Both the position numbers and the translations under genes were made by a program. The notes under the pieces were generated by a model, which saw only the letters and a list, made by a program, of their open reading frames with translations, ran no database searches and was not told the DNA's origin. From positions 96,500 to 126,429 of the forward strand of contig NIVC01001299.1 in assembly GCA_002269645.1 (NCBI GenBank): a DNA stretch of 29,930 bases, given 5' to 3'. The DNA comes from Macrostomum lignano (taxonomy: Eukaryota). The number at the start of each line of letters is the position of its first letter. Positions within the stretch are counted from its first letter, which is position 1. Below are positions 1-26,057 of the stretch, in pieces.

Positions 1-196
1 TCAAGGATTTAAGTGACACGGCCTTTAATATCACGCATCACGCTCACATGATCACGTGACGCGTTGATCCCAGGGCTATAAAGAGATAGATTTTAAGCCC
101 TGAGCGGCAACGGTCGATCCGGCCCTGTCCGGGGCCGGCGTTCCACGCTCCGGTCGCTTTTGATCCCCTCCCGCGTTTACTCCTGAACTTACGAGT

Positions 197-261
197 CAAG
201 GACCACTAGAAGTTACTTCTAGTGGATAATGTGAACTAGAAGTTACTTCTAGTGGTCCTTG
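197..261. mobile_element. 65-bp micro-MITE: 27-bp TIRs (1 mismatch), 11-bp spacer, 8-bp TSD
   Basis: CAAGGACCACTAGAAGT at 197-213 is the reverse complement of ACTTCTAGTGGTCCTTG at 245-261, and pairing extends to 223/235 with one mismatch. TTACGAGT flanks it on both sides (189-196 and 262-269). Confidence 0.85.
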
Positions 262-867
262 TTACGAGTCCGTTCTGCATCCTCTTCCTCTACCGTTTCT
301 TTTCTCACCCATTGGAAAGCTAGCTGCATGTAACTTCCCAATTGACTTTAAACCTCCCGGTCGTGTCTCGTTTGGATTGTCGATCACCCGTGACTGCAGC
401 CGACGCCCTGACTTGCCGACGACCACCGCGCCACAATTGCAGCCCTGCCCGTTGGCCGTGTTCTGTAAGGTATTTCTCTCTCTGATGTGTATAATCCGTT
501 GGGTATAATCAACCCCGGTCTCCCTCCCCATATTGCTCATCATTTCCTAATTTTTCCAATCTTAACATATTTACATAATGCATAATTCTGTTTTAATAAT
601 TTCATGTAACTGAGCGGTCAAGGCCAAGTTTCAGGGCTAATTATTTAGGCCATTAGCTATTATTTTTATCTCGTTTGCTTCTGCCTGTTCAATCACTTAA
701 TTATTTACTTATGAATTGTAACTACGTAACGTGCAGATTCTGCAGGGTTTTCAGAATTCTGACGCAAAAAACGCAAATTATACTACTATCTGAAAATGAA
801 GTAAGTAGTATACAAAAACGCTATCCTAAGCGTGATTCAATATGTAGTTGTAATAATCCATGTGCTC

Positions 868-992
868 ATATTAATTCCATGTACATTAATCCCTATCTAT
901 CTCAAATTGTATATTAATTCCATGTACATTAATCCCTATCTATCTCAAATTGTACATTAATCCCATGTACATTAATCCCTATCCCAAATTGT
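868..992 (+). repeat. 43-bp subterminal tandem repeat, 3 copies (third is 39 bp); mirrored at ~10340-10464
   Basis: ATATTAATTCCATGTACATTAATCCCTATCTATCTCAAATTGT at 868-910 and 911-953, variant at 954-992. Confidence 0.9.
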
Positions 993-1599
993 CTATCCCC
1001 AATTCTATATGTACACTTGCATTAATCTACAGTGTCATCCCCAGCGCGCGCACACCAAAATTACAACTCGAAACCCTACTACATGTTCAATCTCATCCAA
1101 ATGAGTCAACTAATTGCGTAGCTCACATCGTAATGTATATTTCCAACGTACATTCTCAGACAGATTTGAATAATACTGGTCGGAGTCTATATGTACATTG
1201 ATAGCCTCTATACTCATATCTGCTACATACCCCAAAAATTAGGTATGTAAATTTTCACCCTCGGAGACTGTAGGTTTGAATATGTTGATATAATTTATTC
1301 AAAATCTTAAAATACACATACTTTCATATAGAGGCGGGCCTGTACAAACTCTCGCCAAGCGATGGGGTGGAGGTTGCGTCATCCAAGTCTCTCCCAAGTC
1401 TGCCCCCAAATACAAGACTGTTGAAGCAGTGCTTTATATTTCTATTGACAATGGGTATGATACAAGAAGCTTCGTCGCGCTTTAATTACAGTAAACCATC
1501 CCCTCGAAGCTCCTATACTGAATGCTGAATCACCCTTTAACTCGGACCATAGTCAAATTCAACCATGTTCGAAAACAGCCACCCCTCCGATGTTCACCA

Positions 1600-4500
1600 G
1601 ACTCGTCTTCACAGCGCAGACCCATAGCAAATCGAGCTAAATTTTAAAACTCGCCCCTGTTCTCTCTGTCCCCCTTCTAAATGCCAAGGAATTTCGACCC
1701 TCTCTTCATTTTCAGTGTACAGACAGATCTTTCCACAGCACAGACCGTATATTAAACTTCATTCAGCAAAACCCCTCTCTTCTCCGATTACGTCATCCAT
1801 GCCGCCCCAGATAGCAAGAAACCAACTTTTAATGCACACATCAACCCGCGAATCTGAACAAATCCGAGTCCGCCAACCTCTACCTGCATTGACAAACCCC
1901 AGCTGCATCTGTCAATGTACACAGCCTATGAATCAGTGTCTCCACCGCATGCAATTCTGATTTACTTGATTCTAAACTTTGTAAATAGTATAAGTCACCC
2001 TTGCGTTATACTAGAAGTAGTGAAGTCCACAAATTTAAATACGTGAGGCTTCTCCGTAATTCAATTCTGCCTCTCCGGCTCCCCTGCCTTCTCACTTCAA
2101 GCTTTCAGACTTGGTCTTTGAGACGGTTTAATCTGTTAGAAGCAGGAATGAATCATGCACTGACCTCTCCACACAAAGTAAAGTTGGAATTTCAAACAAT
2201 AAATTTGGTTATTTTGAAAGCTAAATGACTAGAAATGCGCAGTTTTTTTATAAGAAAATACAATTTTTCACAGTTTTTATGCATTTTTTACGTTAAAATG
2301 CAGACTTTATTGATCAAAATCAGTAGTTTCATCACTAGAAACCATACTTTCAACAGCTAATTTGTCCAAATGTCGCTTTCAACTTGACCTTAGACAGCTT
2401 TGAAGCAAGAATGAATCCCACACGAACATCCACAAGCCACCCAAATCAACCAAAGACATGGCTATTGAAGCCTAAATTGCTAGAAATGCGCATTTTTTCA
2501 TAAGAAAATACAAATTTTCACAGTTTTTACGCATTTTTCGTTAAAATGCAGACTTTATTGATCAAAATCAGTAGTTTCATCACTAGAAACCATACTTTCA
2601 ACAGCTAATTTGTCCAAATGCCGCTTTCAACTTGGCCTTAGACAGCTTTGAAGCAAGAATGAATCCCACACGAACATCCACAAGCCACCCAGAATCAACC
2701 AAAGACATGGCTATTGAAGCCTAAATTGCTAGAAATGAGCATTTTTTCATAAGAAAATACAAATTTTCACAGTTTTTACGCATTTTTACGTTAAAATGCA
2801 GACTTTATTGATTAAAAATCAGTAGTTTCATCACTAAAAACCACAATTTTAACACAAAATTATCACAAATGCTACTTCTGGAACTCTGAGACAGCTTTGA
2901 GCAGGAATTATAATCGCACACGGATTACCCGAGCCAGTCCAATTTCCACTAAAGCCATGGTTTTTTAAAGCTAATTCTTAGAATTTCTCATTATTTCGTT
3001 TAATAAAGGCCTATTTTCACAGTTTTATTATTTTCTAACGTTAAAATGCGAAATGCGAATCGATCAAACTTAGTAGTTTCATCCGAAAAGCCATAATTTC
3101 AACCGCTAATTTGTCCAAATTCTGATTTCAAAGTTGGCAAGAGACAGCTTTCGAGCAGGAATGAGTCACACACTGATCTCCATATGCACACCCCGGCCCA
3201 AGTTGGAATTCCACCCAAGACATTTTCATTGAAAGCTAAATTACTAGAAATTGCACATTTTCGTTTTAAAAAGGTCAATTTTCACAGTTTTTACTCTTTT
3301 TAACGTTAAAATGCTGACTTTATTGAACAAAATTAATCACTTCATCAGCAGAAACCATAATTTTTACAACTTAATCGTCAAAAATGCTGTTTCATCATTC
3401 AAATGTGTGTATTTGGTACGCGTAATACCCCTCAAGAAGTCGGGAAGGGATTATTCTTGAATATTGGGTTAAAACGTACAGTTTGCTATAAACCTAGCTA
3501 TAATAATTTTAACATATACAGTCGGCGAAGCGGCCCGTTGATTATTTCGATTGACATTTAAACTGTCCCTCCCAGACCTCTCTCTCTCCTTCTGCACCCA
3601 CCGAGAAAAGTGACTCATGCGGCAATCAGCTGGACAGGTTTGGTGTATTACTGAATTGGCAAAACAGCCAACACCCAATGGTCATATTAGACTCGTCTTC
3701 ACAGCACAGACCCATGTAGAACAGAACCACTCGTCCCTGTCTCTCTGACCTTACCATTTCTAACTGTCAAGGAATTCCGACCCTCCCTCTCCAATTTCAG
3801 TGTACAAACAGATATCTTCACAGCACGGACCCATATATTGAGCCTCCTCCAACCAAAACCCTATCTTGATTACGTCATCCACCTCCCCATAGGAGCAGTT
3901 AGCAAGAAACAAAATTTTTCGATGCACATATGAACACTGTGAACCATGCAAAATCGCACATCTACGGGTCGATTTTGATTGACAATTTAATACCTTTTGT
4001 TGATGCTGCTGTGTACAGTAGTCTTATTTCTGAAGCTCCTAGCAGTCATCTTTTAGATGTGGTGAATCAGTGTTGTTTTTGCCAACTTTACATCTTGATT
4101 CATCCTCCAAATTCTTCAACTCTGACGATATTCAATAATTTAACCCATGCAAGTAGATTTGCCAATTCGCCAAATTAGCCAATACGAATGGGGCCAGAGG
4201 ACCCACCCAAATCGAGCCCTTGTCTCTCTCAGGCCTCTCTCTCCTACACAAACCCCAGAAAAGTGACTCATGAGGCAATCAGTTTAACAGGTTCAGTATA
4301 CTGAATTGGCAAAACAGCAAACACCCAATGGTCAATGGACTCGTCTTCGCAGCGCAGGCCCATTTTGAATAAAGCCAAAACACACATACCCCCCTATTCT
4401 CTGACCAAACCTTTCCATTTCTAGTTGTCAACGAAATTCGACCGGCCTCTCTCTCAATCCCAATGTACATTTTGACGAAGCAAGCAGATCTTTTCACAGC

Positions 4501-4705
4501 ACGGACCCAGCCTCCCCCAACCAAAGCCCTATCTCTGATTACGTCATCTATACATCCCCATAGAAGCAGTTAGCAAGAAAAAAATTTCGATGCACATATA
4601 TGAACAATGCGAACCAAGCAAATCCGCGCGTCTACCAAAGCCAACCCTACCCTGCGTGCTGTAATTGCATTTGTCAATGTACACACCCTATGAATCAGTG
4701 TCTCC
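1600..4705 (+). repeat. Dispersed ~350-480-bp diverged module, three copies per arm (~1600-1945, ~3575-3965, ~4225-4705)
   Basis: Shared blocks GACTCGTCTTC(A/G)CAGC(G/A)CAG, CAGAT(C/A)T..TCACAGCAC, GATTACGTCATC and TAGCAAGAAA occur in the same order. Copies 2 and 3 also share GAAAAGTGACTCATG...CTGAATTGGCAAAACAGC. Confidence 0.85.
2140..3400 (+). repeat. ~250-bp AT-rich tandem array in left arm (~5 units)
   Basis: The anchor TAGAAATGCGC...TTTTCACAGTTTT...ACGTTAAAATGC recurs near 2230, 2480, 2730, 2980 and 3245; the last two units are more diverged. Confidence 0.9.
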
Positions 4706-5497
4706 TTCTTTGGAACACACGAAGGCATTAGTCAGAAAGTTTGGATGCAATTAAAAACTCTCTCGATGCTTTGCGTATAAACGAGTAATCGATTGAATCA
4801 ATTGTACACTTGACACATTTAATTACGTGCTGCCATGCAACGGAAAGACAGGATAATGGGGTGGGTGGTCACGCAGCCTCATTCTCTCTTTCCTTCTGAT
4901 CTTTCATTATCTATCAATCTCAGCTCTTTCCGGGGCAACTCGCGCATGTGTGCATAGTTCCTCATCAGATTTACCACATGTTCATTTACATGTGATGTAC
5001 ATATGCAAGTGGCAGCCGATTTAAACCTGAGAAATGGTTGAAGTACTCCCCGACTATGACTAAATGCACGTACGTTCAGTCAAATACAGGAAAATTTGAC
5101 ATCCGTAGTATGAAGATGTAATCTTCACGAAAGCTTCACATGTTTATCTTTCTCTGTGGAAATGACGATAGTTTCTCAATAAAAATCTGTCATAGGCCCA
5201 ATATAGCAGTTTAAATATTTTCACGAAAATGTCGCATTCTTCAAGAACTGATTTTTGCAAACTCTACTGTCAGTAGGAAGATGAGTTTTCATAGAGACAT
5301 TTTGTAAAACATAGACTAAACTTTCAAATCATTCGTTTACACAACCAACTGTCTATATTAATGGTGGGGTTATTATTACTTTACAGAAAAACGCATGTCC
5401 TGTGTTACGACACTGCCTAGCAACCGTATAATTTTTGCAGGTCAAGGAGCATTAATACATGAACTAACACTCCTATTTTACATTCATTGAGAGGCGG

Positions 5498-5575
5498 CGG
5501 CGCGGGCGGAGGCGGCAGTAGAGACAGGGACTGTGCTGCGCACAGTCACGGTCCGGCCCCCTCCGCCCGCTGCCT
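5498..5575. other. Asymmetric GC-rich centre of the palindrome (imperfect hairpin)
   Basis: 59 of 78 bases are G/C. Inner stem GACTGTGC (5529-5536) pairs with GCACAGTC (5540-5547) around a 3-nt TGC loop. The outer part pairs with mismatches and bulges (GGCGGcGGC-GCGGGCGGAG vs GGCGGaGGCaGCGGGCGGAG). Confidence 0.9.
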
Positions 5576-8500
5576 CCGCCTCTCAATGAATGTAAAATAG
5601 GAGTGTTAGTTCATGTATTAATGCTCCTTGACCTGCAAAAATTATACGGTTGCTAGGCAGTGTCGTAACACAGGACATGCGTTTTTCTGTAAAGTAATAA
5701 TAACCCCACCATTAATATAGACAGTTGGTTGTGTAAACGAATGATTTGAAAGTTTAGTCTATGTTTTACAAAATGTCTCTATGAAAACTCATCTTCCTAC
5801 TGACAGTAGAGTTTGCAAAAATCAGTTCTTGGAAGAATGCGACATTTTCGTGAAAATATTTAAACTGCTATATTGGGCCTATGACAGATTTTTATTGAGA
5901 AACTATCGTCATTTCCACAGAGAAAGATAAACATGTGAAGCTTTCGTGAAGATTACATCTTCATACTACGGATGTCAAATTTTCCTGTATTTGACTGAAC
6001 GTACGTGCATTTAGTCATAGTCGGGGGAGTACTTCAACCATTTCTCAGGTTTAAATCGGCTGCCACTTGCATATGTACATCACATGTAAATGAACATGTG
6101 GTAAATCTGATGAGGAACTATGCACACATGCGCGAGTTGCCCCGGAAAGAGCTGAGATTGATAGATAATGAAAGATCAGAAGGAAAGAGAGAATGAGGCT
6201 GCGTGACCACCCACCCCATTATCCTGTCTTTCCGTTGCATGGCAGCACGTAATTAAATGTGTCAAGTGTACAATTGATTCAATCGATTACTCGTTTATAC
6301 GCAAAGCATCGAGAGAGTTTTTAATTGCATCCAAACTTTCTGACTAATGCCTTCGTGTGTTCCAAAGAAGGAGACACTGATTCATAGGGTGTGTACATTG
6401 ACAAATGCAATTACAGCACGCAGGGTAGGGTTGGCTTTGGTAGACGCGCGGATTTGCTTGGTTCGCATTGTTCATATATGTGCATCGAAATTTTTTTCTT
6501 GCTAACTGCTTCTATGGGGATGTATAGATGACGTAATCAGAGATAGGGCTTTGGTTGGGGGAGGCTGGGTCCGTGCTGTGAAAAGATCTGCTTGCTTCGT
6601 CAAAATGTACATTGGGATTGAGAGAGAGGCCGGTCGAATTTCGTTGACAACTAGAAATGGAAAGGTTTGGTCAGAGAATAGGGGGTATGTGTGTTTTGGC
6701 TTTATTCAAAATGGCCTGCGCTGCGAAGACGAGTCCATTGACCATTGGGTGTTTGCTGTTTTGCCAATTCAGTATACTGAACCTGTTAAACTGATTGCCT
6801 CATGAGTCACTTTTCTGGGGTTTGTGTAGGAGAGAGAGGCCTGAGAGAGACAAGGGCTCGATTTGGGTGGGTCCTCTGGCCCCATTCGTATTGGCTAATT
6901 TGGCGAATTGGCAAATCTACTTGCATGGGTTAAATTATTGAATATCGTCAGAGTTGAAGAATTTGGAGGATGAATCAAGATGTAAAGTTGGCAAAAACAA
7001 CACTGATTCACCACATCTAAAAGATGACTGCTAGGAGCTTCAGAAATAAGACTACTGTACACAGCAGCATCAACAAAAGGTATTAAATTGTCAATCAAAA
7101 TCGACCCGTAGATGTGCGATTTTGCATGGTTCACAGTGTTCATATGTGCATCGAAAAATTTTGTTTCTTGCTAACTGCTCCTATGGGGAGGTGGATGACG
7201 TAATCAAGATAGGGTTTTGGTTGGAGGAGGCTCAATATATGGGTCCGTGCTGTGAAGATATCTGTTTGTACACTGAAATTGGAGAGGGAGGGGTCGGAAT
7301 TCCTTGACAGTTAGAAATGGTAAGGTCAGAGAGACAGGGACGAGTGGTTCTGTTCTACATGGGTCTGTGCTGTGAAGACGAGTCTAATATGACCATTGGG
7401 TGTTGGCTGTTTTGCCAATTCAGTAATACACCAAACCTGTCCAGCTGATTGCCGCATGAGTCACTTTTCTCGGTGGGTGCAGAAGGAGAGAGAGAGGTCT
7501 GGGAGGGACAGTTTAAATGTCAATCGAAATAATCAACGGGCCGCTTCGCCGACTGTATATGTTAAAATTATTATAGCTAGGTTTATAGCAAACTGTACGT
7601 TTTAACCCAATATTCAAGAATAATCCCTTCCCGACTTCTTGAGGGGTATTACGCGTACCAAATACACACATTTGAATGATGAAACAGCATTTTTGACGAT
7701 TAAGTTGTAAAAATTATGGTTTCTGCTGATGAAGTGATTAATTTTGTTCAATAAAGTCAGCATTTTAACGTTAAAAAGAGTAAAAACTGTGAAAAATTGA
7801 CCTTTTTAAAACGAAAATGTGCAATTTCTAGTAATTTAGCTTTCAATGAAAATGTCTTGGGTGGAATTCCAACTTGGGCCGGGGTGTGCATATGGAGATC
7901 AGTGTGTGACTCATTCCTGCTCGAAAGCTGTCTCTTGCCAACTTTGAAATCAGAATTTGGACAAATTAGCGGTTGAAATTATGGCTTTTCGGATGAAACT
8001 ACTAAGTTTGATCGATTCGCATTTCGCATTTTAACGTTAGAAAATAATAAAACTGTGAAAATAGGCCTTTATTAAACGAAATAATGAGAAATTCTAAGAA
8101 TTAGCTTTAAAAAACCATGGCTTTAGTGGAAATTGGACTGGCTCGGGTAATCCGTGTGCGATTATAATTCCTGCTCAAAGCTGTCTCAGAGTTCCAGAAG
8201 TAGCATTTGTGATAATTTTGTGTTAAAATTGTGGTTTTTAGTGATGAAACTACTGATTTTTAATCAATAAAGTCTGCATTTTAACGTAAAAATGCGTAAA
8301 AACTGTGAAAATTTATATTTTCTTATGAAAAAATGCTCATTTCTAGCAATTTAGGCTTCAATAGCCATGTCTTTGGTTGATTCTGGGGTGGCTTGTGGAT
8401 GTTCGTGTGGGATTCATTCTTGCTTCAAAGCTGTCTAAGGCCAAGTTGAAAGCGGCATTTGGACAAATTAGCTGTTGAAAGTATGGTTTCTAGTGATGAA

Positions 8501-10611
8501 ACTACTGATTTTTAATCAATAAAGTCTGCATTTTAACGAAAAAATGCGTAAAAACTGTGAAAATTTGTATTTTCTTATGAAAAAATGCGCATTTCTAGCA
8601 ATTTAGGCTTCAATAGCCATGTCTTTGGTTGATTCTGGGGTGGCTTGTGGATGTTCGTGTGGGATTCATTCTTGCTTCAAAGCTGTCTAAGGCCAAGTTG
8701 AAAGCGGCATTTGGACAAATTAGCTGTTGAAAGTATGGTTTCTAGTGATGAAACTACTGATTTTGATCAATAAAGTCTGCATTTTAACGAAAAAATGCGT
8801 AAAAACTGTGAAAATTTGTATTTTCTTATGAAAAAATGCGCATTTCTAGCAATTTAGGCTTCAATAGCCATGTCTTTGGATGATTTTGGGCTGGCTTGTG
8901 GATGTTTGTGTGGGGTTCATTCCTGCTTAAAAGCTGTCTAAGGTCAAGTTGAAAGCGACATTTGGACAAATTAGCTGTTGAAAGTATGGTTTCTAGTGAT
9001 GAAACTACTGATTTTGATCAATAAAGTCTGCATTTTAACGTAAAAAATGCATAAAAACTGTGAAAAATTGTATTTTCTTATAAAAAAACTGCGCATTTCT
9101 AGTCATTTAGCTTTCAAAATAACCAAATTTATTGTTTGAAATTCCAACTTTACTTTGTGTGGAGAGGTCAGTGCATGATTCATTCCTGCTTCTAACAGAT
9201 TAAACCGTCTCAAAGACCAAGTCTGAAAGCTTGAAGTGAGAAGGCAGGGGAGCCGGAGAGGCAGAATTGAATTACGGAGAAGCCTCACGTATTTAAATTT
9301 GTGGACTTCACTACTTCTAGTATAACGCAAGGGTGACTTATACTATTTACAAAGTTTAGAATCAAGTAAATCAGAATTGCATGCGGTGGAGACACTGATT
9401 CATAGGCTGTGTACATTGACAGATGCAGCTGGGGTTTGTCAATGCAGGTAGAGGTTGGCGGACTCGGATTTGTTCAGATTCGCGGGGTTGATGTGTGCAT
9501 TAAAAGTTGGTTTCTTGCTATCTGGGGCGGCATGGATGACGTAATCGGAGAAGAGAGGGGTTTTGCTGAATGAAGTTTAATATACGGTCTGTGCTGTGGA
9601 AAGATCTGTCTGTACACTGAAAATGAAGAGAGGGTCGAAATTCCTTGGCATTTAGAAGGGGGACAGAGAGAACAGGGGCGAGTTTTAAAATTTAGCTCGA
9701 TTTGCTATGGGTCTGCGCTGTGAAGACGAGTCTGGTGAACATCGGAGGGGTGGCTGTTTTCGAACATGGTTGAATTTGACTATGGTCCGAGTTAAAGGGT
9801 GATTCAGCATTCAGTATAGGAGCTTCGAGGGGATGGTTTACTGTAATTAAAGCGCGACGAAGCTTCTTGTATCATACCCATTGTCAATAGAAATATAAAG
9901 CACTGCTTCAACAGTCTTGTATTTGGGGGGCAGACTTGGGAGAGACTTGGATGACGCAACCTCCACCCCATCGCTTGGCGAGAGTTTGTACAGGCCCGCC
10001 TCTATATGAAAGTATGTGTATTTTAAGATTTTGAATAAATTATATCAACATATTCAAACCTACAGTCTCGAGGGTGAAAATTTACATACCTAATTTTTGG
10101 GGTATGTAGCAGATATGAGTATAGAGGCTATCAATGTACATATAGACTCCGACCAGTATTATTCAAATCTGTCTGAGAATGTACGTTGGAAATATACATT
10201 ACGATGTGAGCTACGCAATTAGTTGACTCATTTGGATGAGATTGAACATGTAGTAGGGTTTCGAGTTGTAATTTTGGTGTGCGCGCGCTGGGGATGACAC
10301 TGTAGATTAATGCAAGTGTACATATAGAATTGGGGATAGACAATTTGGGATAGGGATTAATGTACATGGGATTAATGTACAATTTGAGATAGATAGGGAT
10401 TAATGTACATGGAATTAATATACAATTTGAGATAGATAGGGATTAATGTACATGGAATTAATATGAGCACATGGATTATTACAACTACATATTGAATCAC
10501 GCTTAGGATAGCGTTTTTGTATACTACTTACTTCATTTTCAGATAGTAGTATAATTTGCGTTTTTTGCGTCAGAATTCTGAAAACCCTGCAGAATCTGCA
10601 CGTTACGTAGT
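5576..10611 (-). repeat. Right arm of giant inverted repeat (5036 bp)
   Basis: Mirror coordinate sums are ~11074 near the centre and ~11332 near the ends, i.e. ~258 extra bp inside the 250-bp array. Confidence 0.97.
7680..9190 (-). repeat. ~250-bp AT-rich tandem array in right arm (~6 units)
   Basis: The reverse-complement anchor recurs near 7825, 8090, 8340, 8590, 8840 and 9095. Confidence 0.9.
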
Positions 10612-10752
10612 ATTGTATCAACTGTGAATAATGAGTGCGCCTGTCGCGCATGAAATCGAAGTCGAGGATCAGAGTAGTGGAAGATCACCGAGTTTAACCA
10701 AATAATCATAGCAGTAACAATACCTTTAAATAATTGTCCCCGTAGGATGTAC

Positions 10753-10830
10753 GGAGGGTGAGGCGGATCCAATGGAGAGTCAGAGAGGAGGGTGAGGCGG
10801 AGCAACAGGAGAGTCAGAGAGGAGGGTGAG
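10753..10830 (+). repeat. 34-bp purine-rich tandem repeat, 2.3 copies
   Basis: GGAGGGTGAG... units start at 10753, 10787 and 10821. Confidence 0.85.
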
Positions 10831-11220
10831 CAGGATTCGGACGAAATTACAGCTGGCATAAACTTCTCGTACACCACAAGAGAGCTCTAGGGCCTTCACT
10901 TCCCCATCCCCTATTGCATCAAACCCATTCTAGGAGGAAAAAATTAAGATGGCGTTATCTATATCTTCCCTTGGAATCCTGGTGCTTAGGAGCTGGAATC
11001 GGTAGTAAGATCGCTCACCATCTAAAAGACCCCCCCCCTAAGCAAAATTCCTCAATTCCAGCATTGACTAGATTGTCCCTGTATGCCTCGCATAGAGCCA
11101 TTTCAATATACAAGTATTACTGGCATACAGTAAAAAACTTATTTCTAAAGGTGACAATTTCCGTGCTACACCATACATATTTACTACCTGAATTGCTAAG
11201 CAGCTTTCCTGCTCTTCTTT

Positions 11221-11260
11221 AAATTAAATAACTTGCTAAGACAGGCAAGTTATTTAATTT
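11221..11260. other. Perfect 16-bp inverted repeat with 8-bp asymmetric spacer
   Basis: AAATTAAATAACTTGC-TAAGACAG-GCAAGTTATTTAATTT. Confidence 0.9.
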
Positions 11261-11298
11261 TCTTCTCTTCGAGTCTTCTCTCTTCCGACCGTCTTTAC

Positions 11299-11382
11299 GC
11301 GTGGCGAGAGCATCCAAAAATAAATCGCGTGGCGAGAGCATCCAAAAATAAATCGCGTGGCGAGAGCATCCAAAAATAAATC
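11299..11382 (+). repeat. 28-bp perfect tandem repeat, 3 copies
   Basis: GCGTGGCGAGAGCATCCAAAAATAAATC at 11299, 11327 and 11355. Confidence 0.95.
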
Positions 11383-11954
11383 AACGAATAATCAGCCCAG
11401 TGTCAAAAACTCCAGCGATTCGCCGGCTAGACTACTTTTAAGCCCCCAAAATATTAAAAATACTGTGTACCTGTTGTACAAAAAATATTATATTAATACT
11501 ATATTACTTTTAGTATCTATTTTATAGCTGAATTTAGTTGAAATGTACAAATTGCCTACCTACAAAAAAGTAGTTAAAAGGGCGGAACCGCCAGCTAAAA
11601 GGCCAACTAATGTCCGGAGCGAAGAGGCGGAGACGAGCGAGCGGGCGATCGAGTACAGCGAGGCAGGCCCCAGAGCGATTAGGGCCCGCATTTTTCAAGT
11701 ATATTGTTGCGAAAATTAAAAATTTTGAGCGGCAGCAGCGCCCTCGATCGCGTTGAGCTGAGCAACGTATATATAAAACACACGCACACTGGGGATTAGG
11801 GGTGTTGAGTCAGAGCACGTACGTACAGCGCGTAAAAACAAGCACAAGTACAAGGTCGGGGCGATAAAAAGGGGGGCAGCGAGGCAGGTCGCTCAGCCAT
11901 TAAAAACGGCTAAAGCCCACTTGCTTTACCAGCCAATAACCGGCAATCGTCTGA

Positions 11955-12838
11955 CATGCGTGGTGCCTCATATATGGTGCAACAGCGAAGACTACGCCGC
12001 CTTTGGAGCCTCATGTCCTTGAGCCAGGCTCGGACAGATCCTCTGAAACAATTTCCTCGGCTAGCGGCTCTGCGACTTTGTTGGAAGGTGCTGGCCCAGC
12101 CAGCACCGAAGACCTCAATGCAGCCGCATCCGCATCAGCATCCGATGCCGATTCGACTGAGGAGGCACCTGCCAGCAATATTCAATATGATAACCCGATA
12201 AGCTATCCAATCAATGCGGACAAGTCCGGCGGCATCATCAAGCGCTTGGATGATGTCCAGCTTGAGTACTATCCTAATATGAGGCTTCCGAGCTCTATGA
12301 TAGACTACTCAAGGACCTCCTGCCAGTAGTGGTGCTGGCCAATAGACCAACAGAGCAGCGCAAGGTGGTCTGGTTTGGGCCAGACTACTCTTAATCCGGT
12401 GTGTCATTAGGTGCTAATCCGAACTGGCACCCAGCCGTTGAGGACATGCGCAACTTCCTCGAATTTAATGCCGAGTTGAATGCTCCTAAGTTTAACAGCT
12501 GCCTAATTAATTTCTATGAGACAGCTGACGACTACATCCCGTACCATGCCGACGACGAGGCCGAGCTGGGTCAAGATCCATGCATAGCAATGGTCTCGTT
12601 CGGTGTCGTCAGGCAATTTCTAGTACGCAATAATGCGGATCAACGCGAAGTCGCGAACTTTGACGCAAAACCCGGCTCTGTTATCATTATGGCTGGGGCC
12701 TGTCAAAGAAAGTGTAAGCACAGTGTCCCGGGTGTCGGTATCCAGGAGGGCATCCGTATTTCGCTCACCTTTAGGGTGACGCATCTCCCTTCAAGTCGTG
12801 AGTCCGACGCTCTTACCATTAAGCTACAGCCCCTCTAG
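11955..12838 (+). pseudogene. AlkB-family 2OG-Fe(II) dioxygenase (ALKBH2/3-like), intronless, disrupted
   Basis: An Ala/Ser/acidic N-terminal region is followed by LEYYPN, a frameshift near 12278, then EASELYDRLLKDL...RKVVWFGPDYS*SG (TAA at 12392-12394 where YxYSG is expected), FNSCLINFYE, YHADDE (HxD), IAMVSFG, KHSVP (His) and RISLTFR (RxxxxxR). Confidence 0.88.
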
Positions 12839-15041: not shown

Positions 15042-15078
15042 CTTACTACTTCTGGTAGGCTACCATGTTTGGAGATCC

Positions 15079-16549
15079 CTACAAGGGTGGTCCGCCGGTC
15101 CGTCTTGCAGCGTGATCTTCCGTGGGGAAGAAAGTGGCTCGTCTTGTCGTCCAAAGGAACTGGATGAGCCGTGGGATGCTGTCGGGCTGGCAGACATCGT
15201 CAATGGACGGGTTCGGCCCGAGGTAGCGTAGCCAGTCTCTGGTAAAGAAAGGGCAGTGACAAACAAAATGCTCAGCATCCTCATTGTCGTACTCACAAAA
15301 AGGGCAAAGTTCACTTTCGAGGTCGCCTCGGAGAGGAAGCAGTGCCTGGCGAGGTAGCCATGGCCGGTAAAGGTCATGACAAGGGCTCGAATATCCTTCT
15401 GATTTTGGTTCAGAAGGACGTTTCTGAGCCTACGAGAGAGACACGGAACCGCGGCACGAGATTGTCGGCAGTTTTGTGTGCCCGCCCATCTGTCCCTGTG
15501 GAGGGAGTCAGCCCAGTCATCGATCTGACGATGATGACTGTCAAGGGCATAGGGACCAAGGGGGCAGGGCCAAAGAAAGAGCCAGAGCCGCCCCTCTTGG
15601 CGAGGGTCCCCGGAAACCCTGCGTGTCCTACCCTTCAGCCTAACAGTATTGCTACTGGCCAGAAGGTTGAGCTGCCGGACGCAGTCGGCGACTGTCCGGG
15701 AGTTCGTTGTGGTGTGGCAAAGGGCCTGTAAGGCCGCTTGGCTTTCAGAGTGGATGACAATAGTCTCTCCTCTCGTACCCTTGGCGTTCAGCTCTGCAGC
15801 GCAGGAGCTGATGGCAAGGACTTCGTTCTGGAAGACTGTGGAGAGTCTGCCAGTGTGCTGGGCATACGTAAAAATGACGCGGCCGTTGATGATGATGCAG
15901 ACCCCAAAGCCGGTGTGGCGGTCTTTGATGGATCTGTCCGTGTAGCAATGGACCTCCTGGAAGTTCCAGTTGTCAGTGGCAGCATCCCTTGAGGGGATGG
16001 TGACCTTGTAGCGCTGAAAGAGGTTGAGAGTGCGGCGTTCGCCGTCAGATAAGACGTGGAGCCCGCTCGCTGTCTCTCAAGTCTTTGAGGCAGAGGTCGG
16101 CGAGAGGCAGCAGCTTGCGCTTAGCCATGGCCCTTTGGGGCTGGATTCGAATGCCAGCGTCAATTAGACGGCGGGTAGTCTTAGCCGCTTCCCTGCGGAC
16201 GAAGATGTCCAGCGGGGGAATGTTGAGGAAGGCGTTGTGGCCATCTTAGGGAGCAGACGGGGGGCGCTCATGATCATGCGGCATGCGCGCCCTTGCGCTC
16301 TCCTGAGAGCCTCTAGACAGGTCTTCATCTGCAGGGCGCTAGCCCAGATCAGGCCGCCATACTAGATAGCGGGCCTAACCATTGCAGTGTAGATCCACCA
16401 GAGGCGCTTGGGGGTGAGCCCCCAGGTGGTGCCGACAGCCCTGCGCGGTTTCGCGAGGACTGCGAGGGCCTTTTTGGCTTTTGTTTGAACGTGGGGTGAC
16501 CAGTTCAGCCTGTGCTCCAGGGTAATACCTAGACATTTAGTCTGCTTGC
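15079..16549 (-). pseudogene. LINE ORF2, 3' part: RT thumb, RNase H and CCHC zinc knuckle
   Basis: Minus-strand translation gives KQTKCLGITLEHRLNW, WGLTP...WIYTAMVRP, FLNIPPLD, the RNase H motifs YTDRS (for YTDGS), TVFQNEVLAI and IHSESQAAL, then CPFCEYDNEDAEHFVCHCP, with the stop at 15079-15081. Confidence 0.92.
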
Positions 16550-18383: not shown

Positions 18384-20146
18384 TTGCAGAAGAGGATTTC
18401 CCTTCCGTAAAGTGTGAGCGACCGAATCTGCCACTTGGTCCTGCTGGTGAACATGATCGCTGCGGTCTTAGTCTCAGAGAGCTTTAGACCACAGCGATCC
18501 GCCCATTGCTCAGCGGCGTAGATGAAGTTCTGAAGAAGGTCCCTGATGGTGTCAGGGGACGGACCAGATGCCACCGCGGTGACATCGTCCGCATATCCTA
18601 CTTTCAGAATGGGGTCAGGCGAGCATCCCGAAGGAGCTCATCGATGATCATGATCCAGAGAACTGGAGACAGCACCCCACCTTGCGGGCTACCTTTGCAG
18701 ACGGGGACCGTCCTCTGGTAGCCCAGCAGACTTGCGGTGGCCGTGCGATGGCTGATCATGTACATGATCCATCTGGTGAGATGTGAGTGCGTTTGCCTCT
18801 CACAAAGAGCTCTTCGGAACGCCTCGAAGAGGATGTTATCGAAGGCGCCAATGATGTCCAGGAAGATCCCCAGAGCGAAGCCGCAACCAAGCACGGCCTT
18901 CTCAAGTTATCGAGCAGGACGTACAGCGCGATTTCAGTGGAGCGACCCACCCGAAAAACGTGCTGGTTCTCGCTGGTAGGCTTGTTCTTCAGCTCTACGG
19001 AGAGAAGGCGCCACAGCACCAGTCTCTCCATCAGCTTGACCGGGGAGGAGGTCAGGCTGATCGGTTTGAAGGATTTGATAGATTGGTATTCCGGGCGGCC
19101 TGGCTTAGGGATAAAAATCACCTTTGCCTCGGTCCATGCCTGCGGAACATAACCAAGCACGCCCGAAAAAGGCTGCAAAGTTTACGCAGGAAGCCTGGGC
19201 AATTAACCGCCTCTCTTAGAAGGGCAGGTACGATGCCGTCGGACCCTGGGGCTTTGAAAGGTTTGAAGGAGTTAGCCACTCTCACGATGCGGTCCTCCGT
19301 GATAATAGAGGCAGCCAGCGCGTGACCTCCCTCCGAGTGATCCGGAGTGGTCGGGCTAGCTGGCTCGTTGGGGAAAAACGCAGTGAGCATTTCATCAAGC
19401 GTTTCCCCTGGGTTGTCCGTGGACGTACCGTTGGTGCGTTTGACTGAGGAAAGCTTAGAAATTTTGTCCAGCGTAAGCGCTTTCGCAATTCTGGAGGTGG
19501 GGCGTGAGCCCTCTAGCTCCTCGCAGTATTGTCGCCATTTTTGAGCCTTTGCATTCCTAACCTGCCTTTTTAAACTCATGGATTGCTTCATGATAGGCGG
19601 TTTGGTCCGCTGGGCTCTTAGTTTTAGTTGCTCTGCGGTGGAGTCTCTTAGCTCTGCGACGGAGGCCAGATTAATGCCGGTGCTGCCCCAGTGAGTATGG
19701 TGGGCGTTGATGTCGCTGGCAACCATAAGCTCGTAGTTTTTGGCACAGCAGAGCTCCACCAGCGTAGCGAGGGCTCTGGGGACGACCGCAGCATCGCCTG
19801 GTAGGTAGACCGAGGCTATGAGGGTGGTCTTCCCAGGAAGGAGGTCCTCAGATTGGATGACGCAGATGTCCCTGTTAGACAGGTCCGATCTGAGCCACGC
19901 ACTGAACATGTTGACCGAAAAGATGCAAGCTCTGGGAGACTGGTTGGCCTCGTGAAGTTATGTATAAAAACAGTTGTAGCTGGCAGGGGCGTTTTGAGGC
20001 TTACCTCTAAGAGTCCAGGGTTCCTGGACGAAGATGAGCCCTGGCGTGTCGAGCTCGGCGTGACGCATAAGGTTGACCGAGGCTGCAACGCAGTGTTGCA
20101 GATTAATCTGCTAGCAATGGATTCCCTGGCTGCTGATCATTATCAT
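18384..20146 (-). pseudogene. LINE ORF2, 5' part: AP endonuclease and reverse transcriptase (stops, frameshifts, internal deletion)
   Basis: APE motifs QINLQH, FVQEPW, PRACI, SNRD, SVYLP and DINAHHTHWGS; the C-terminal half of APE appears deleted near 19670. RT motifs FKAPGSDGI, WTEAKVIFIPKPG, FKPISLTS, FLDIIGAFD, GSPQGGVLSP and YADD (18584-18595). Confidence 0.95.
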
Positions 20147-20344
20147 GCAGTTGGGTAATCTGTGAGCAGGTCATCCTCCTCCTTTTCAGGGGTGGTTGGC
20201 CCTCAGATCTCCATGGGAGTTTCAGCGTCCTCGGCAGTTAGGGTGGCTGCGGAGTCCTCCGCGGGTATGAGCCCAGCGTGGACGTTACCGTCGCCTCCCC
20301 TACGTGCTTCGGTGCTTCACTGCCCGTCCCCTCTGCCTCGTCGG

Positions 20345-21310
20345 TCAGGTCGATGCGGGTGGTGCCAGCCTCCTGGTGAGTCGCAGACTCGAACAGTCGG
20401 TCGGCGCCTTCCCGCCGACAGCCCGGCCTTCTGGCTGTTGGGGTGGAGCACGAGAAGCGCGGGCCTGGATCAGACCGGACCTCCGGGTGCTCCTGGCGGG
20501 TCTGCGATTGCGATATCCGGTTTTAGCAGCGCGAACTGCCTTACTGGGCTTGGGGTCGGCCGTTTGCCTCAGCTTCTTTGCCGGAAGAGCCTGGGCCCCA
20601 GTTCCGGTTTCGGAAACCTCGGCATGCTTGGCTTCATCAGCTTTCCGCTCCTTGCAACGGAGGATGGTCAGCTGAGTCAGACGAAGGTGGATTGTGGACT
20701 TAGGCGGCAGGCGCTTAGCCCAGTCGTCGGAGAGCCCAAGAATCACCGTGGCCCCCTTCTCCTTGCGGGAAGTGGCGTGGTGTATTATCCCATTGACCTC
20801 AAGGCCAGGATGCAGCTTTAGCAGGATTAGCCTAAGCTGATCCCCGGACTTAATGGCACTGCCGGCCGGGATCCGGACGCAAAAGCGCTGGGTCTTTTGT
20901 TGCTCGCCCTCGCTGGCGAAGACAAGCTTGCCGAGCTTCTTGGGCCTGTTCAACTTTGGCAGAAGCTCGCGTAGACTGCGGCTGCTCTCCTCCGAGTTGC
21001 ACCAGATGAAGATGCAGCCGTCGGTCTTGGTAGATTTGACCACGCTCACGGGCGTAGTTGGTGGCGGCGGTTCCCGAAGGCCCGGCCGCGCTGGTAGCAG
21101 GTTTACTGGGTGGCTCATCAGCGGGGGTTGTATCCTGGGGGCAGGGGTTGCTGTGGCTCCTTTCGGCCCAACGGCAGCCTCGCCCTCCCTAGGTTCCCCC
21201 TCCGCCGGTGGCCGGCCCGCAGTATCCCGCAGTCGCCGTCGCCGCTCGTTGCGGCGTTGGTTGCGGGCACGTCGGGCCTCTGCTGAGGGCCCGGGTGCGC
21301 GTGCGGGCAT
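20345..21310 (-). CDS. LINE ORF1 (321 aa; basic Arg-rich N-terminus, Pro-rich linker, central globular region)
   Basis: ORF track 20345..21310, directly upstream of ORF2 on the same strand. The composition is typical of LINE ORF1; no specific domain was confirmed. Confidence 0.7.
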   Translation of the reverse strand: MPARAPGPSAEARRARNQRRNERRRRLRDTAGRPPAEGEPREGEAAVGPKGATATPAPRIQPPLMSHPVNLLPARPGLREPPPPTTPVSVVKSTKTDGCIFIWCNSEESSRSLRELLPKLNRPKKLGKLVFASEGEQQKTQRFCVRIPAGSAIKSGDQLRLILLKLHPGLEVNGIIHHATSRKEKGATVILGLSDDWAKRLPPKSTIHLRLTQLTILRCKERKADEAKHAEVSETGTGAQALPAKKLRQTADPKPSKAVRAAKTGYRNRRPARSTRRSGLIQARASRAPPQQPEGRAVGGKAPTDCSSLRLTRRLAPPAST

Positions 21311-21960
21311 GTCACCGGCCGAGCCGGTGGCAAGCCCATCTGCCCCCGGTGGGGCGGCGCTGGTGCTAGAGTCACCGGCCGGAGTTGCCGGGGCCCCGGC
21401 TTCAGCGGGAGTTTTATGTTTTAGAGGCGGAGCTGAAAGCGGGAAGGAGTGAGCTGAGTCACAAAGGAAAGAGGAAAGAAGAAAAAGGAAAAGGAAGGAC
21501 CGCTAGCGACCGGACAACCCCCCGGCCTTCCAGCCCATCGGCACAGTCAAACACCTTAGGCACGTTAAGCAGTACCACGGCCTGCAGGCTGGCGAGCCAG
21601 ACCCGCATACCCAAGTTCGGCCGAAGCCACTAGATGCGTCGCCAGCGTCGGAGCCCAGTCAGTCCAGCAGCCCCAGGGTCTGCCTTGAACACACGCGGGG
21701 ACGAGTACCCCTGGGTCCTGGGTACCCCTACTACTTGCGAGACAGCGTGGGGGAGGGTCTGCGGCTGCCAGCGGCAAATAGAGGGTGCAGACCTCCCACC
21801 AGCCTTAACCTGCGGATAGATAGGGGATAGGGGCAGGCGTGAAGCATCGCAGACCATAGCCCATAGGCCTGGTCTGTCTCATATTTCACAGGCGTGCTGA
21901 ATACACCTTCGCATGCAATATATCCGCTACATTTACTTTAGTAATGGCGATACGCGAGAT

Positions 21961-22384
21961 CAGGGGTGTCGCCATGGATTTTTTGGTGGGGGGGCACCAG
22001 GCACTCATTTTTGCGCCGCAGGCAGTCATTTTGGCGCCGCAGGCAGTCATTTTGGCGCGCCGCAGGCACTCATTTAGCACCGCAGGCACTCATTTTAGCG
22101 CCGCAGGCACTCATTTTAGCGCCACAGGCACTCATTTAGCACCGCAGGCACTCATTTTAGCGCCACAGGCACTCATTTAGCGCCAGCACTCACGCGCCGC
22201 AACTCATTTTATTCATCTTAGCACCACAGGCACTATCTTAGCGGGCCACTCATTTTAGCGGCAGCCACATTGGCATGCCCCCGCAAAATTATTGATTTCC
22301 ATAACGGGTCACATGGGGGGGGGGGGAAAGCATTGGCATGCCCCCCACACATGTCCCCCCTGTCCCCCATTGGCGACGCCCCTG
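21961..22384. mobile_element. hAT-type MITE, 424 bp, with internal ~21-bp minisatellite
   Basis: TIR CAGGGGTGTCGCCA (21961) / TGGCGACGCCCCTG (22371-22384) with 1 mismatch, 8-bp TSD CGCGAGAT (21953-21960, 22385-22392), and internal GCAGGCACTCATTTTAGCGCC-like units at ~22000-22260. Confidence 0.92.
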
Positions 22385-22850
22385 CGCGAGATAGCAATTA
22401 AATTAAAAGCGTTCTAACAAATCTGCAACCAAGGAACGAATTATTCTGTATATAACAATTTCCGGATCCATGGCTATAATCAGAAGTTTCTACGAGTATT
22501 TTAAAAAAAATTTGGCTTCAATTAGTCCATCATTCGAGCGGTATTTTTGATAGAAAATGGATACTACACTACAGATGCTAGGCTATAACTAGCTCAGTAT
22601 ATAATGTGACTGAAATATTTCATGGACTTTTAATTTGCTTCCGCTGTCCCGATGTTATCTATGTAACAAAGCCGCAAGCTCAGGTATGGGCATGATTTAG
22701 TCTAGGGCACCGATAAGATGCAGTTTGCACGGCTGGAACAGGACCGCCTGGCTTAACCGAGTAAAGAATTCGGTAGTAACCAGTAAACAACTTGATAATT
22801 CTTGCCTTAGAAAATTGTTTAGCAGGCTGCATTAAAAACCGAAGTCGAAA

Positions 22851-23682
22851 ATGCGAGCCCGACTCCGCACGGTGACCGGTGCCGCTCAGGAGGTGGCTGG
22901 CATCACGAGAACTCACGGCTTGCTGCACATATTCCTGTCCAGAAGCACAGCTAGACGGCTCTTCTGGCTGCTTCTGTTCGTAGCTGCCCTGATCGGCTGC
23001 ACCGTCCACCTGGCCAAGTTGGTGCAGAAGTTCACCGAGCACTCCGTTGAGTCGCAGCTGAAGCTGAGGAGCGAACAAGCCCAGTTTCCCGAGGTCACAA
23101 TCTGCAACTTCAAGCCCCTTTCTGCAAGCGTAGGTCCTAATATTCTTGTAAGCAAATACTTTCCGACTTTCTGGGGCAATTTCGTCAACTGGTTCAAAGA
23201 GGACACCCCGAAGCGCCCGCAAGAATCGGATGAAAGCTATGAAAGCCGACTTGAGACGGTGTGCAAGAAGGTCCTAGACGTGATGTGGGTGTCGGACGAC
23301 ACCAGAGACATCTCCCACCTCGACGAGACCATGCTGCTGCGATGCCGCTACAACAACGAGCCATGCAGTTACAAAAACTTTTCGCTTGTCCAGACGAGCC
23401 GGTTCTGGAACTGCTACACGTTCCACCCGGACCCAAAGCAGTCGTCCAGCGGTTCTGGGGGCAGAGGAGCCAAGTTGGACATGGTTCTCTTCACCGATGG
23501 ATACATTGGCTCTTCTAGTTTTACCTACCGTCCCGAATTTTCTAATATTATTTCAAAACTAGTATGTCTTGGTCGATTGGCTTTCAATATGATAGCTATA
23601 AGCCGGCTGCTGAACAACAACCAACCTCAGTCGAATGGATTGCGAATTTTCTTTCACGAAGCAAAAAGCTACCCGTTGACTG
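22851..23682 (+). CDS. DEG/ENaC (amiloride-sensitive sodium channel family) exon 1
   Basis: TRTHG (pre-TM1 HG motif), TM1 RRLFWLLLFVAALIGC, FPEVTICN, RCRYNNEPC..NF.....RFWNCYTF and NGLRIFFHE; donor ACTG|GTACGT at 23683 (phase 1). Confidence 0.92.
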
Positions 23683-23892
23683 GTACGTATTATTTAAAAA
23701 ATAGATTTTTTGCCTAGTAAGGTTTTACTTTGCTTAGAGGGTTTATAATTGTCTTGATTTAGAACTGCAATACTTTCCAAATGCTCGAAAACTTCGAAGG
23801 TTCTATAAAAATGAACGATTCATCGAGCAAAAGATTCCAAATGCTCACTTTAGCTTTTATCGCTAAAACCTTTTACCCATGCTAAACTGCAG

Positions 23893-25976: not shown

Positions 25977-26057
25977 AATCTCTGTATTTTACTGTCACAG
26001 CATGAAAAATCCCTGTAACTTACTGTCACAGCATGATAAATCTCTGTAACTTACTGT
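25977..26057 (+). repeat. 31-bp tandem repeat, 2.6 copies
   Basis: AATC(T/C)CTGTA..TTACTGTCACAGCATGA at 25977, 26008 and 26039. Confidence 0.85.

What the first reader, a model, noticed from the sequence alone, without database searches (positions are those of the whole stretch)
715..10617. A 9.9-kb element that is entirely one palindrome, inserted with a 6-bp target-site duplication
Seen: the two ~5-kb arms are near-identical reverse complements, the boundaries are sharp, and the same hexamer ATTGTA sits directly outside both ends; removing the element leaves ...TTATGA-ATTGTA-TCAACTG.... No transposase, polymerase or integrase is visible inside. Known: 6-bp TSDs with long TIRs are typical of Polintons/Mavericks (retroviral-type integrase), but those normally have AG...CT termini and a coding interior, whereas this element is AC...GT and is all TIR. 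Long, internally repetitive arms are typical of foldback elements (Drosophila FB, Galileo), but their TSDs are longer. Inference: this could be a non-autonomous member of an undescribed class in which a ~5-kb unit with one hairpin end is copied into a duplex palindrome, whose two identical free ends are then integrated by an integrase supplied in trans.
Basis: partly seen in the sequence, partly recalled or inferred. Interest (0 to 1): 0.88.

Follow-up and report, generated by a model that had tools for sequence, protein, structure and literature searches.

The report
Non-coding foldback transposon in a flatworm
The 9.9-kb palindrome is real and looks like one insertion of a gene-less "foldback" transposon (two long inverted arms and almost nothing between) in a Macrostomum flatworm genome, so it is a new family of a known kind of element rather than a new class.

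Summary
Bases 721-10611 (9,891 bp) form one palindrome. The same hexamer, ATTGTA, lies directly outside both ends (715-720 and 10612-10617). The chance of such a flank match is about 3e-4.

Outside a tandem array and the centre, the arms show 0 substitutions in 3,587 aligned positions. The remaining differences are one extra ~250-bp repeat unit in the right arm, eight one-base gaps (mostly in homopolymer runs), and an imperfect GC-rich hairpin of about 70 bp at the centre.

Nothing in the element codes for a protein. Each arm has a terminal domain, a ~250-bp tandem array and an inner domain. This is the published layout of foldback elements (Tetris, Galileo two-TIR copies), including unequal repeat numbers in the two arms.

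The 6-bp duplication is shorter than the 7-10 bp reported for those families, so the transposase superfamily stays unassigned. The termini do not fit IS3EU/GingerRoot, and no Polinton hallmark gene is present.

The host is a close relative of Macrostomum lignano. The central imperfect hairpin does fit a fold-back origin of the palindrome.

Interest is modest.

The parts
715..720 (.). Left copy of the 6-bp target-site duplication, ATTGTA
   Evidence: Read directly. Chance of a flank 6-mer match is 3.4e-4.
721..10611 (.). The whole element: a 9,891-bp non-coding palindrome (foldback-type transposon)
   Evidence: Inverted-repeat map. Arm alignment. The terminal 16-mer occurs only at the two ends of the element. 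No part matches the rest of the window.
721..5501 (+). Left arm (perfectly paired part)
5572..10611 (-). Right arm (perfectly paired part); carries one extra ~250-bp unit
721..1263 (+). Terminal (flanking) domain of the left arm; mirrored at 10069-10611
   Evidence: nhmmer finds it only at the two ends.
868..983 (+). Subterminal 43-bp tandem repeat, 2.7 copies; mirrored at 10349-10464
   Evidence: Tandem Repeats Finder.
1572..2049 (+). Copy 1 of a diverged direct repeat ('B'); mirrored at 9282-9760
   Evidence: blastn and nhmmer, 65-74% identity to the other B copies.
2214..3392 (+). ~250-bp tandem array, about 4.7 units, progressively diverged inwards
3564..4900 (+). B repeat copies 2 and 3 (3564-4220 and 4221-4900), tandem, ~74% alike; mirrored at 6176-7510
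4901..5501 (+). Inner unique domain of the left arm; mirrored at 5572-6174
5502..5571 (.). GC-rich centre: an imperfect palindrome folding as one hairpin. Apical stem 5529-5536 / 5540-5547, loop 5537-5539.
   Evidence: Sequence. DNA fold of 5476-5597: -58.7 kcal/mol, z = -14.4. 5 mismatches and 8 gap columns in the half-hairpin.
7682..9117 (-). ~250-bp tandem array of the right arm, about 5.7 units
10612..10617 (.). Right copy of the 6-bp target-site duplication, ATTGTA
   Evidence: Read directly.

Best explanation
Bases 721-10611 are one insertion of a non-autonomous foldback-type class II (terminal-inverted-repeat) transposon in the genome of a Macrostomum flatworm.

Shown:
- Sharp palindromic ends.
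- An exact 6-bp target-site duplication.
- No coding capacity.
- Arms built as terminal domain / ~250-bp tandem array / inner domain.
- Practically identical arms.
- An imperfect hairpin at the centre.

Inferred:
- The element was cut out of, or copied from, another site and joined to target DNA cut with a 6-bp stagger. The enzyme was a transposase or integrase encoded elsewhere in the genome that recognises the two identical ends.
- The palindrome arose when one half-element folded back on a short imperfect inverted repeat (now the centre) and was copied. This gave two identical ends, and the only asymmetry left is at the fold-back point.
- It reached this site already as a palindrome.
- Slippage in the tandem array later changed the unit number in one arm. 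Alternatively, the assembly miscounted it.
For: TSD and boundaries: ATTGTA lies directly outside both ends, with 30/30 complementarity inside and 12/30 outside. The chance of the hexamer match is 3.4e-4.

Arms: 0 substitutions in 3,587 positions. The one-base gaps lie mostly in homopolymer runs.

Non-coding: the longest stop-free stretch is 110 aa. No Pfam hit reaches a cut-off in the 20 longest pieces. Two pieces have no protein relative in either large protein search.

Modular arms with a 43-bp subterminal repeat, a ~250-bp array (4.7 versus 5.7 units) and older direct repeats at 65-78% identity. Published parallels:
- Tetris has a flanking domain, ~220-bp tandem repeats, an inner domain, a non-coding middle and no ORFs (PMC4079207).
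- Galileo has two-TIR copies, ~210-bp tandem repeats with different numbers in the two TIRs of one copy, and TIR growth by recruiting internal sequence (PMC3573991).

All substitutions between the halves, apart from the seven inside the tandem array, lie in the central hairpin. That is what copying through an imperfect fold-back would leave.
Against: Only one copy has been seen. No second copy, autonomous relative or empty site was found in any collection I could reach. Mobility therefore rests on one TSD.

The 6-bp TSD is shorter than in the described foldback families: 7 bp in Galileo, 8-10 bp in Tetris, 9 bp in Tm1.

The arms of 4.8-5.0 kb are longer than those reported in those papers.

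The perfect arm identity could partly be an effect of polishing an assembly with reads that map to both arms.

Nothing shows that the palindrome, rather than a shorter ancestor, was the unit that inserted.
Confidence: 0.58

Rival explanations
1. Growth in place. An ordinary, shorter element with modest inverted ends inserted here and made the ATTGTA duplication. Later one half was replaced by an inverted copy of the other. This would need a template switch at the short central inverted repeat and a switch back within the terminal repeat. On this reading the 9.9-kb palindrome never moved as such.
For: Recruitment of internal sequence into the TIRs, and independent change of the two TIRs, are documented for Galileo (PMC3573991). 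The asymmetric centre with a short imperfect inverted repeat fits a template switch as well as it fits a fold-back before insertion. The arm identity shows the palindrome is very young, and that does not require it to have transposed.
Against: It needs two separate recent events at one site, since both the TSD and the arms are unblemished. No remnant of a former middle or of a second, different half is left.
Confidence: 0.25
2. New class. A ~5-kb unit with one hairpin end is regularly copied into a duplex palindrome. Its two identical free ends are then joined to the chromosome by a retroviral-type integrase supplied in trans, possibly from a Polinton-like element.
For: [quoted passage not shown] The arms are identical and the differences are confined to the central hairpin. 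The element has no genes of its own.
Against: Every structural feature is already explained by the foldback class. No integrase, protein-primed polymerase, capsid, ATPase or protease gene lies in the element or anywhere in the 30-kb window. TSD length alone does not identify the enzyme: the MuDR/IS256 lineage is reported to make 4-10 bp duplications. No relatives were found.
Confidence: 0.06
3. Assembly artefact: a fold-back chimeric long read, or a mis-join, created the palindrome.
For: The arms are identical except for homopolymer-length differences typical of long-read consensus. Tandem-unit counts are error-prone in assemblies.
Against: A fold-back chimera gives a right flank that is the reverse complement of the left flank. 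Here the palindrome stops sharply (12/30 outside), the two flanks are unrelated, and they share a direct 6-bp repeat. The centre has a structured, asymmetric hairpin rather than an arbitrary breakpoint.
Confidence: 0.04
4. In-place inverted duplication of ordinary host DNA by a replication error. The two ATTGTA copies would be a chance match or a microhomology, and no mobile element would be involved.
For: Short inverted repeats such as the one at the centre can seed palindromes (inference from established knowledge of palindrome formation). No other copy of the sequence has been seen.
Against: The direct hexamer exactly at both boundaries has a chance of about 3e-4. A copy-back would continue into the reverse complement of the left flank, and it does not. 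The foldback-type modular arms are not expected of random host DNA.
Confidence: 0.04

Closest known systems
Tetris (foldback element of Drosophila virilis; PMC4079207)
   Same: Non-coding. The long inverted arms have an outer flanking domain, an array of ~220-bp tandem repeats (here ~250 bp) and an inner domain. There is a TSD, and no autonomous partner is known.
   Different: [quoted passage not shown] Here the arms are 4.8-5.0 kb, the middle is reduced to an imperfect hairpin of ~70 bp, and the TSD is 6 bp. No sequence similarity was tested, because no Tetris sequence was on hand.
Galileo two-TIR (2T/2RT) copies, P superfamily (PMC3573991)
   Same: Non-autonomous copies made of the two TIRs only. 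They have ~210-bp tandem repeats inside the TIRs whose number differs between the two TIRs of one copy. The TIRs lengthen by recruiting internal sequence.
   Different: Galileo has a 7-bp TSD and TIRs up to about 1.25 kb, and autonomous copies with a P-type transposase are known. None of these holds or is known here.
Drosophila FB and Mutator/Phantom-type foldback elements such as Tm1 (PMC3169594)
   Same: Composite inverted repeats of variable length made of internal repeats, and many non-coding copies.
   Different: Tm1 has a 9-bp TSD, and its internal repeats are short (13-15 bp). The two TIRs of one Tm1 element are on average 93% identical. Here the arms show no substitutions outside the array and centre.
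IS3EU / GingerRoot (PMC10045372)
   Same: 6-bp TSD.
   Different: Complete families are reported with TA..TA termini (GingerRoot occasionally TG..CA). This element begins AC and ends GT. Foldback derivatives are not described in the source I read.
Polinton / Maverick (PMC4046053, PMC10045372)
   Same: 6-bp TSD and terminal inverted repeats.
   Different: Polintons are 15-20 kb and are defined by a protein-primed B-family polymerase. They also carry a packaging ATPase, a protease and capsid genes. None is present here, and the element is 9.9 kb and non-coding.
Palindromes formed by fold-back at a short inverted repeat (gene-amplification palindromes, ciliate rDNA; from established knowledge, no source read here)
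   Same: Long perfect arms around a short asymmetric centre that contains a short inverted repeat.
   Different: Those are chromosomal or extrachromosomal amplification products, without transposon-type ends or a TSD.

Membership tests
Foldback-type (FB-like / two-TIR) class II elements | Long terminal inverted repeats that make up most or all of the element | tested here: met
   The arms 721-5501 and 5572-10611 pair along their whole length.
Foldback-type (FB-like / two-TIR) class II elements | Arms are modular and internally repetitive (flanking domain, tandem-repeat domain, inner domain) | tested here: met
   43-bp x 2.7 subterminal repeat, a ~250-bp array and ~657-bp diverged repeats. The scheme is as in PMC4079207.
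Foldback-type (FB-like / two-TIR) class II elements | Flanked by a target-site duplication | tested here: met
   ATTGTA on both sides.
Foldback-type (FB-like / two-TIR) class II elements | TSD length as in described families (7 bp Galileo; 8-10 bp Tetris, Tm1) | tested here: not met
   Exactly 6 bp, and it cannot be extended. This argues for a different transposase lineage, not against the structural class.
Foldback-type (FB-like / two-TIR) class II elements | A dispersed family of copies, each with its own TSD | not testable with these tools
   The source genome is not in any searchable collection. Terminal and internal probes found nothing. Four M. lignano loci carry nothing similar.
Polinton / Maverick | 6-bp TSD | tested here: met
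   The family feature is from PMC10045372.
Polinton / Maverick | Encodes a protein-primed B-family DNA polymerase (the defining gene), plus packaging ATPase, protease and capsid proteins; 15-20 kb | tested here: not met
   No ORF longer than 110 aa and no Pfam hit at a cut-off. The element is 9.9 kb. Features are from PMC4046053.
Polinton / Maverick | For a non-autonomous derivative: the ends match those of an autonomous Polinton in the same genome | not testable with these tools
   No genome of the host species is available. No integrase or polymerase gene lies in the window.
IS3EU / GingerRoot | 6-bp TSD | tested here: met
   The family feature is from PMC10045372.
IS3EU / GingerRoot | TA..TA termini (GingerRoot occasionally TG..CA) | tested here: not met
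   The element begins AC and ends GT. No shift of the boundary gives the reported termini together with a 6-bp direct repeat.
Dada (own knowledge: 6-7-bp TSD, inserts into small-RNA genes) | The insertion lies inside a tRNA or snRNA gene | tested here: not met
   No Rfam family at gathering score and no tRNA anywhere in the window.
Mutator / MuDR lineage (most described foldback elements) | TSD within the range reported for the lineage (4-10 bp for IS256/MuDR) | tested here: inconclusive
   6 bp lies inside the range quoted in PMC10045372, but outside the 8-10 bp of the foldback members read here. No transposase is available to compare.

The most novel reading that the evidence does not exclude
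The element belongs to an undescribed kind of mobile palindrome. A half-unit with a hairpin end would be copied into a duplex whose two identical ends are inserted, with a 6-bp stagger, by an integrase-type enzyme supplied by another element. The central imperfect hairpin would be the replicated hairpin tip. The perfect arm identity would be renewed at each cycle.
Probability: 0.06. Interest if true: 0.75.

Novelty: new member of a known kind. Interest (0 to 1): 0.3.

Why it matters
As it stands, this is a clean, very young example of a foldback-type element in free-living flatworms, whose DNA transposons I found undescribed in the Macrostomum papers I searched.

Three points give it some value:
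- Its 6-bp duplication implies a transposase lineage different from those tied so far to foldback elements in the sources read.
- The arms are unusually long and identical, with all substitutions concentrated at the central hairpin. This is a readable trace of how such palindromes form.
- A 10-kb near-perfect palindrome 1.3 kb upstream of a gene is a likely fragile site and a possible source of hairpin RNA. Both could be examined with existing read and small-RNA data.

If a genome census showed many copies with the same centre and an integrase-type partner, the finding would rise considerably.

Tried and rejected
**Searches for other copies**
- Terminal 22-25-mers in metagenome, viral and prokaryotic-genome collections found nothing.
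- A 26-mer from the tandem unit in metagenomes found nothing.
- Exact-protein look-ups for one element ORF and three window ORFs were not on record.

**Protein-level relatives of element pieces**
- The word-indexed search and the full HMMER scan of 1.84 billion representatives both found none.

**Coding remnants**
- Pfam on the 20 longest stop-free pieces gave only sub-threshold noise, with E of 0.06 or higher and far below the cut-offs.

**Empty-site test through M. lignano**
- Four paralogous loci, L001-L004, were fetched.
- They align to window 22.7-28.9 kb at 78-90% identity. None reaches or matches 1-11500.
- The AlkB-like neighbour gene gave no flatworm homologue to walk from.

**Shared transposase-binding motif between the terminus and the tandem units**
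- A gapped motif, TACGT-N4/5-TGCAGA, occurs at both ends and in several units. I chose it after seeing it.
- An unbiased local alignment of the terminal 60 nt against the unit is not better than shuffles or control windows: 473 of 2,000 shuffles do as well. I rejected it as evidence.

**Other checks**
- Nested TIR elements inside an arm: none.
- RNA families or tRNA genes at the target: none.
- A single arm with its own inverted ends: the terminal 16-mer occurs only at the two outer ends.
- Macrostomum papers for palindromic or foldback repeats: nothing described.

I also repeated the terminal letters that the finding quotes for Polintons. The report cites only letters read from the window or from the cited papers.
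Full report
**1. The observation**

The inverted-repeat scan tiles 700-10632 with arm pairs that are 98-100% complementary. Reading the ends shows the following:
- The element starts at 721 with ACTACGTAACGTGCAG.
- It ends at 10611 with the exact reverse complement of that sequence.
- ATTGTA lies directly outside on both sides, at 715-720 and 10612-10617, in the same orientation.

The next base on either side breaks the repeat, so the duplication is exactly 6 bp. The 16-nt terminus occurs nowhere else in the window, even with three mismatches allowed.

Complementarity is 30/30 just inside the ends and 12/30 just outside. The empirical chance that the 6-mer left of one point equals the 6-mer right of another in this window is 3.4e-4. 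Joining the flanks gives one uninterrupted AT-rich site with a single ATTGTA.

**2. How perfect the palindrome is**

I aligned the left half globally to the reverse complement of the right half.

| Region | Matches | Substitutions | Gap columns |
|---|---|---|---|
| Outer domain, 721-2213 | 1,492 | 0 | 3 |
| Inner domain, 3393-5489 | 2,095 | 0 | 5 |
| Tandem array, 2214-3392 | 1,172 | 7 | 257 (one 253-bp indel plus four small gap columns) |
| Centre half-hairpin, 5490-5536 | 38 | 5 | 8 |

- The eight one-base gaps in the outer and inner domains lie mostly in C or T runs. That is the usual signature of long-read consensus error.
- The seven mismatches in the array lie where the register is ambiguous.
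- The arrays have about 4.7 units on the left (2214-3392) and about 5.7 on the right (7682-9117).
- The centre (5502-5571) is GC-rich and only imperfectly self-complementary. As a single strand, 5476-5597 still folds into one hairpin with bulges, an 8-bp apical stem and a 3-nt loop: -58.7 kcal/mol against -22 for shuffles, z = -14.4.

So 'entirely one palindrome' is nearly right. The asymmetries are one repeat unit and the tip.

**3. What the arms contain**

There is no coding capacity:
- The longest stop-free stretch in any frame is 110 aa.
- The 20 longest pieces give no Pfam match anywhere near a cut-off.
- Two pieces have no relative in the word-indexed search or in the full scan of 1.84 billion representatives.

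Each arm is modular (left-arm coordinates):
- A terminal domain at 721-1263, containing a 43-bp x 2.7 tandem repeat.
- A stretch containing the first copy of a diverged repeat, 'B', at 1572-2049.
- The ~250-bp tandem array.
- Two further tandem B copies at 3564-4220 and 4221-4900, about 74% alike.
- A unique inner domain at 4901-5500.

No nested inverted-repeat element lies inside an arm. No part of the element resembles the remaining 19 kb of the window.

The internal repeats are old (65-78% identity), whereas the two arms are identical. The arm sequence therefore has a long history, but the palindrome itself is either very young or is kept homogeneous.

**4. Host and surroundings**

The window is from an animal genome:
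- An amiloride-sensitive sodium-channel (ASC) gene at 22.8-24.8 kb. Its best relatives are Macrostomum lignano proteins at 68-75% identity.
- A LINE fragment with endonuclease and reverse-transcriptase matches on the minus strand at about 18.7-21.5 kb.

Four M. lignano loci carrying the channel paralogues align to window 22.7-28.9 kb at 78-90% nucleotide identity, minisatellites included. All four are about equally distant, and no window ORF is on record. The window therefore most likely comes from a close relative of M. lignano, not from that assembly.

The element lies about 1.3 kb upstream of an AlkB-like 2OG-Fe(II) oxygenase gene. The window contains no transposase, integrase or polymerase gene. 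It has no RNA family or tRNA at the target.

**5. Relatives**

None could be found:
- Terminal and internal probes are absent from the metagenome, viral and prokaryotic collections.
- The M. lignano loci hold nothing similar to 1-11500.
- The Macrostomum papers I could search describe no palindromic or foldback repeat.

This is the main limit of the report.

**6. Mechanism**

The sharp inverted ends and the exact duplication are the standard footprint of joining two element ends to target DNA cut with a stagger, here of 6 bp. Since the element encodes nothing, the enzyme must come from elsewhere.

The distribution of differences is informative. There are no substitutions in about 3.6 kb of arm, against five substitutions and eight gap columns in the 47-nt half of the tip. 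Random divergence would not give this.

It is what remains if a half-element folded back on a short, imperfect inverted repeat and was copied. The arms are then born identical, and the mispaired tip is preserved as an asymmetric centre. Secondary repair at the tip of a palindrome, or errors in a GC-rich simple repeat, could add to it.

Whether this happened before the insertion (the palindrome moved) or at this site (TIR growth in place) cannot be decided from one copy. I favour the former slightly. An unblemished TSD together with unblemished arms is explained by one recent event rather than two.

**7. Comparison with known elements**

The layout matches published foldback elements:
- Tetris has a flanking domain, ~220-bp tandem repeats, an inner domain and a non-coding middle. 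It has no ORFs, no known partner and a TSD of 8-10 bp.
- Galileo has non-autonomous 'two-TIR' copies and ~210-bp tandem repeats whose number differs between the two TIRs of a copy. Its TIRs lengthen by recruiting internal sequence, and its TSD is 7 bp.
- Tm1 has composite TIRs and a 9-bp TSD.

[quoted passage not shown] The differences here are the 6-bp TSD, arms of 4.8-5.0 kb and an almost absent middle.

Among lineages reported with 6-bp duplications:
- IS3EU/GingerRoot has TA..TA termini, which this element lacks.
- Polintons are defined by genes that are absent here.
- The MuDR/IS256 lineage is quoted with 4-10 bp and cannot be excluded.

The superfamily is therefore unassigned.

**8. Verdict**

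This is a real, recent insertion of a gene-less foldback-type transposon: a new family of a known structural kind in a little-studied host. I give it about 6%.

An assembly artefact is unlikely. A fold-back chimera would mirror the flank, and this one does not.

Noticed in passing
window 11955-12835 (+): An AlkB-like 2OG-Fe(II) oxygenase gene lies about 1.3 kb downstream of the element. The exon at 12395-12835 matches Pfam PF13532 (E = 1.5e-20). Its best database matches are bacterial or metagenomic AlkB proteins at 34-49% identity, and no flatworm protein was returned. The length filter of the search may hide longer eukaryotic homologues. A 44-bp stretch of the exon end (12790-12833) matches M. 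lignano locus L002 18657-18700 at 86%; this is unexplained.
   Followed up: partly
window ~18700-21500 (-): A fragmentary LINE-type retrotransposon. It has endonuclease (PF14529) and weak reverse-transcriptase (PF00078) matches in separate stop-free pieces, and a 385-aa piece upstream with no Pfam match. It is GC-rich (55-63%).
   Followed up: partly
window 22700-28900; loci L001-L004: The sodium-channel (ASC/DEG-ENaC) gene and its downstream region are collinear with four paralogous M. lignano loci (assembly GCA_002269645.1) at 78-90% nucleotide identity. All four are about equally distant, so the window is probably from a sister Macrostomum species. Collinearity stops upstream of about 22.7 kb.
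   Followed up: yes
window 28420-28914; also 25026-25384, 26397-26681, 21998-22184: Several minisatellite arrays: 32 bp x 15.5, 44 bp x 8.2, 21 bp x 13.6 and 21 bp x 9. The 32-bp array is conserved at about 90% identity in the M. lignano loci. The 31-bp unit at 25976-26057 is expanded into long arrays in L001 and L002.
   Followed up: partly
window 721-5500 and mirror: There is a strong strand asymmetry of base composition along each arm, read from terminus to centre: C 23.8% against G 15.4%, GC skew about -0.2 to -0.3. It flips exactly at the centre. The cause is unknown; it may simply reflect the repeat content.
   Followed up: no
window 10753-10830 and 11298-11382: Two short tandem repeats (34 bp x 2.3 and 28 bp x 3.0, the latter 100% identical) lie in the right flank, between the element and the AlkB-like gene.
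   Followed up: no
window 15063-16076 (-): A 338-aa stop-free stretch in a GC-rich block (55-59% GC) has no Pfam match. It was not examined further.
   Followed up: no
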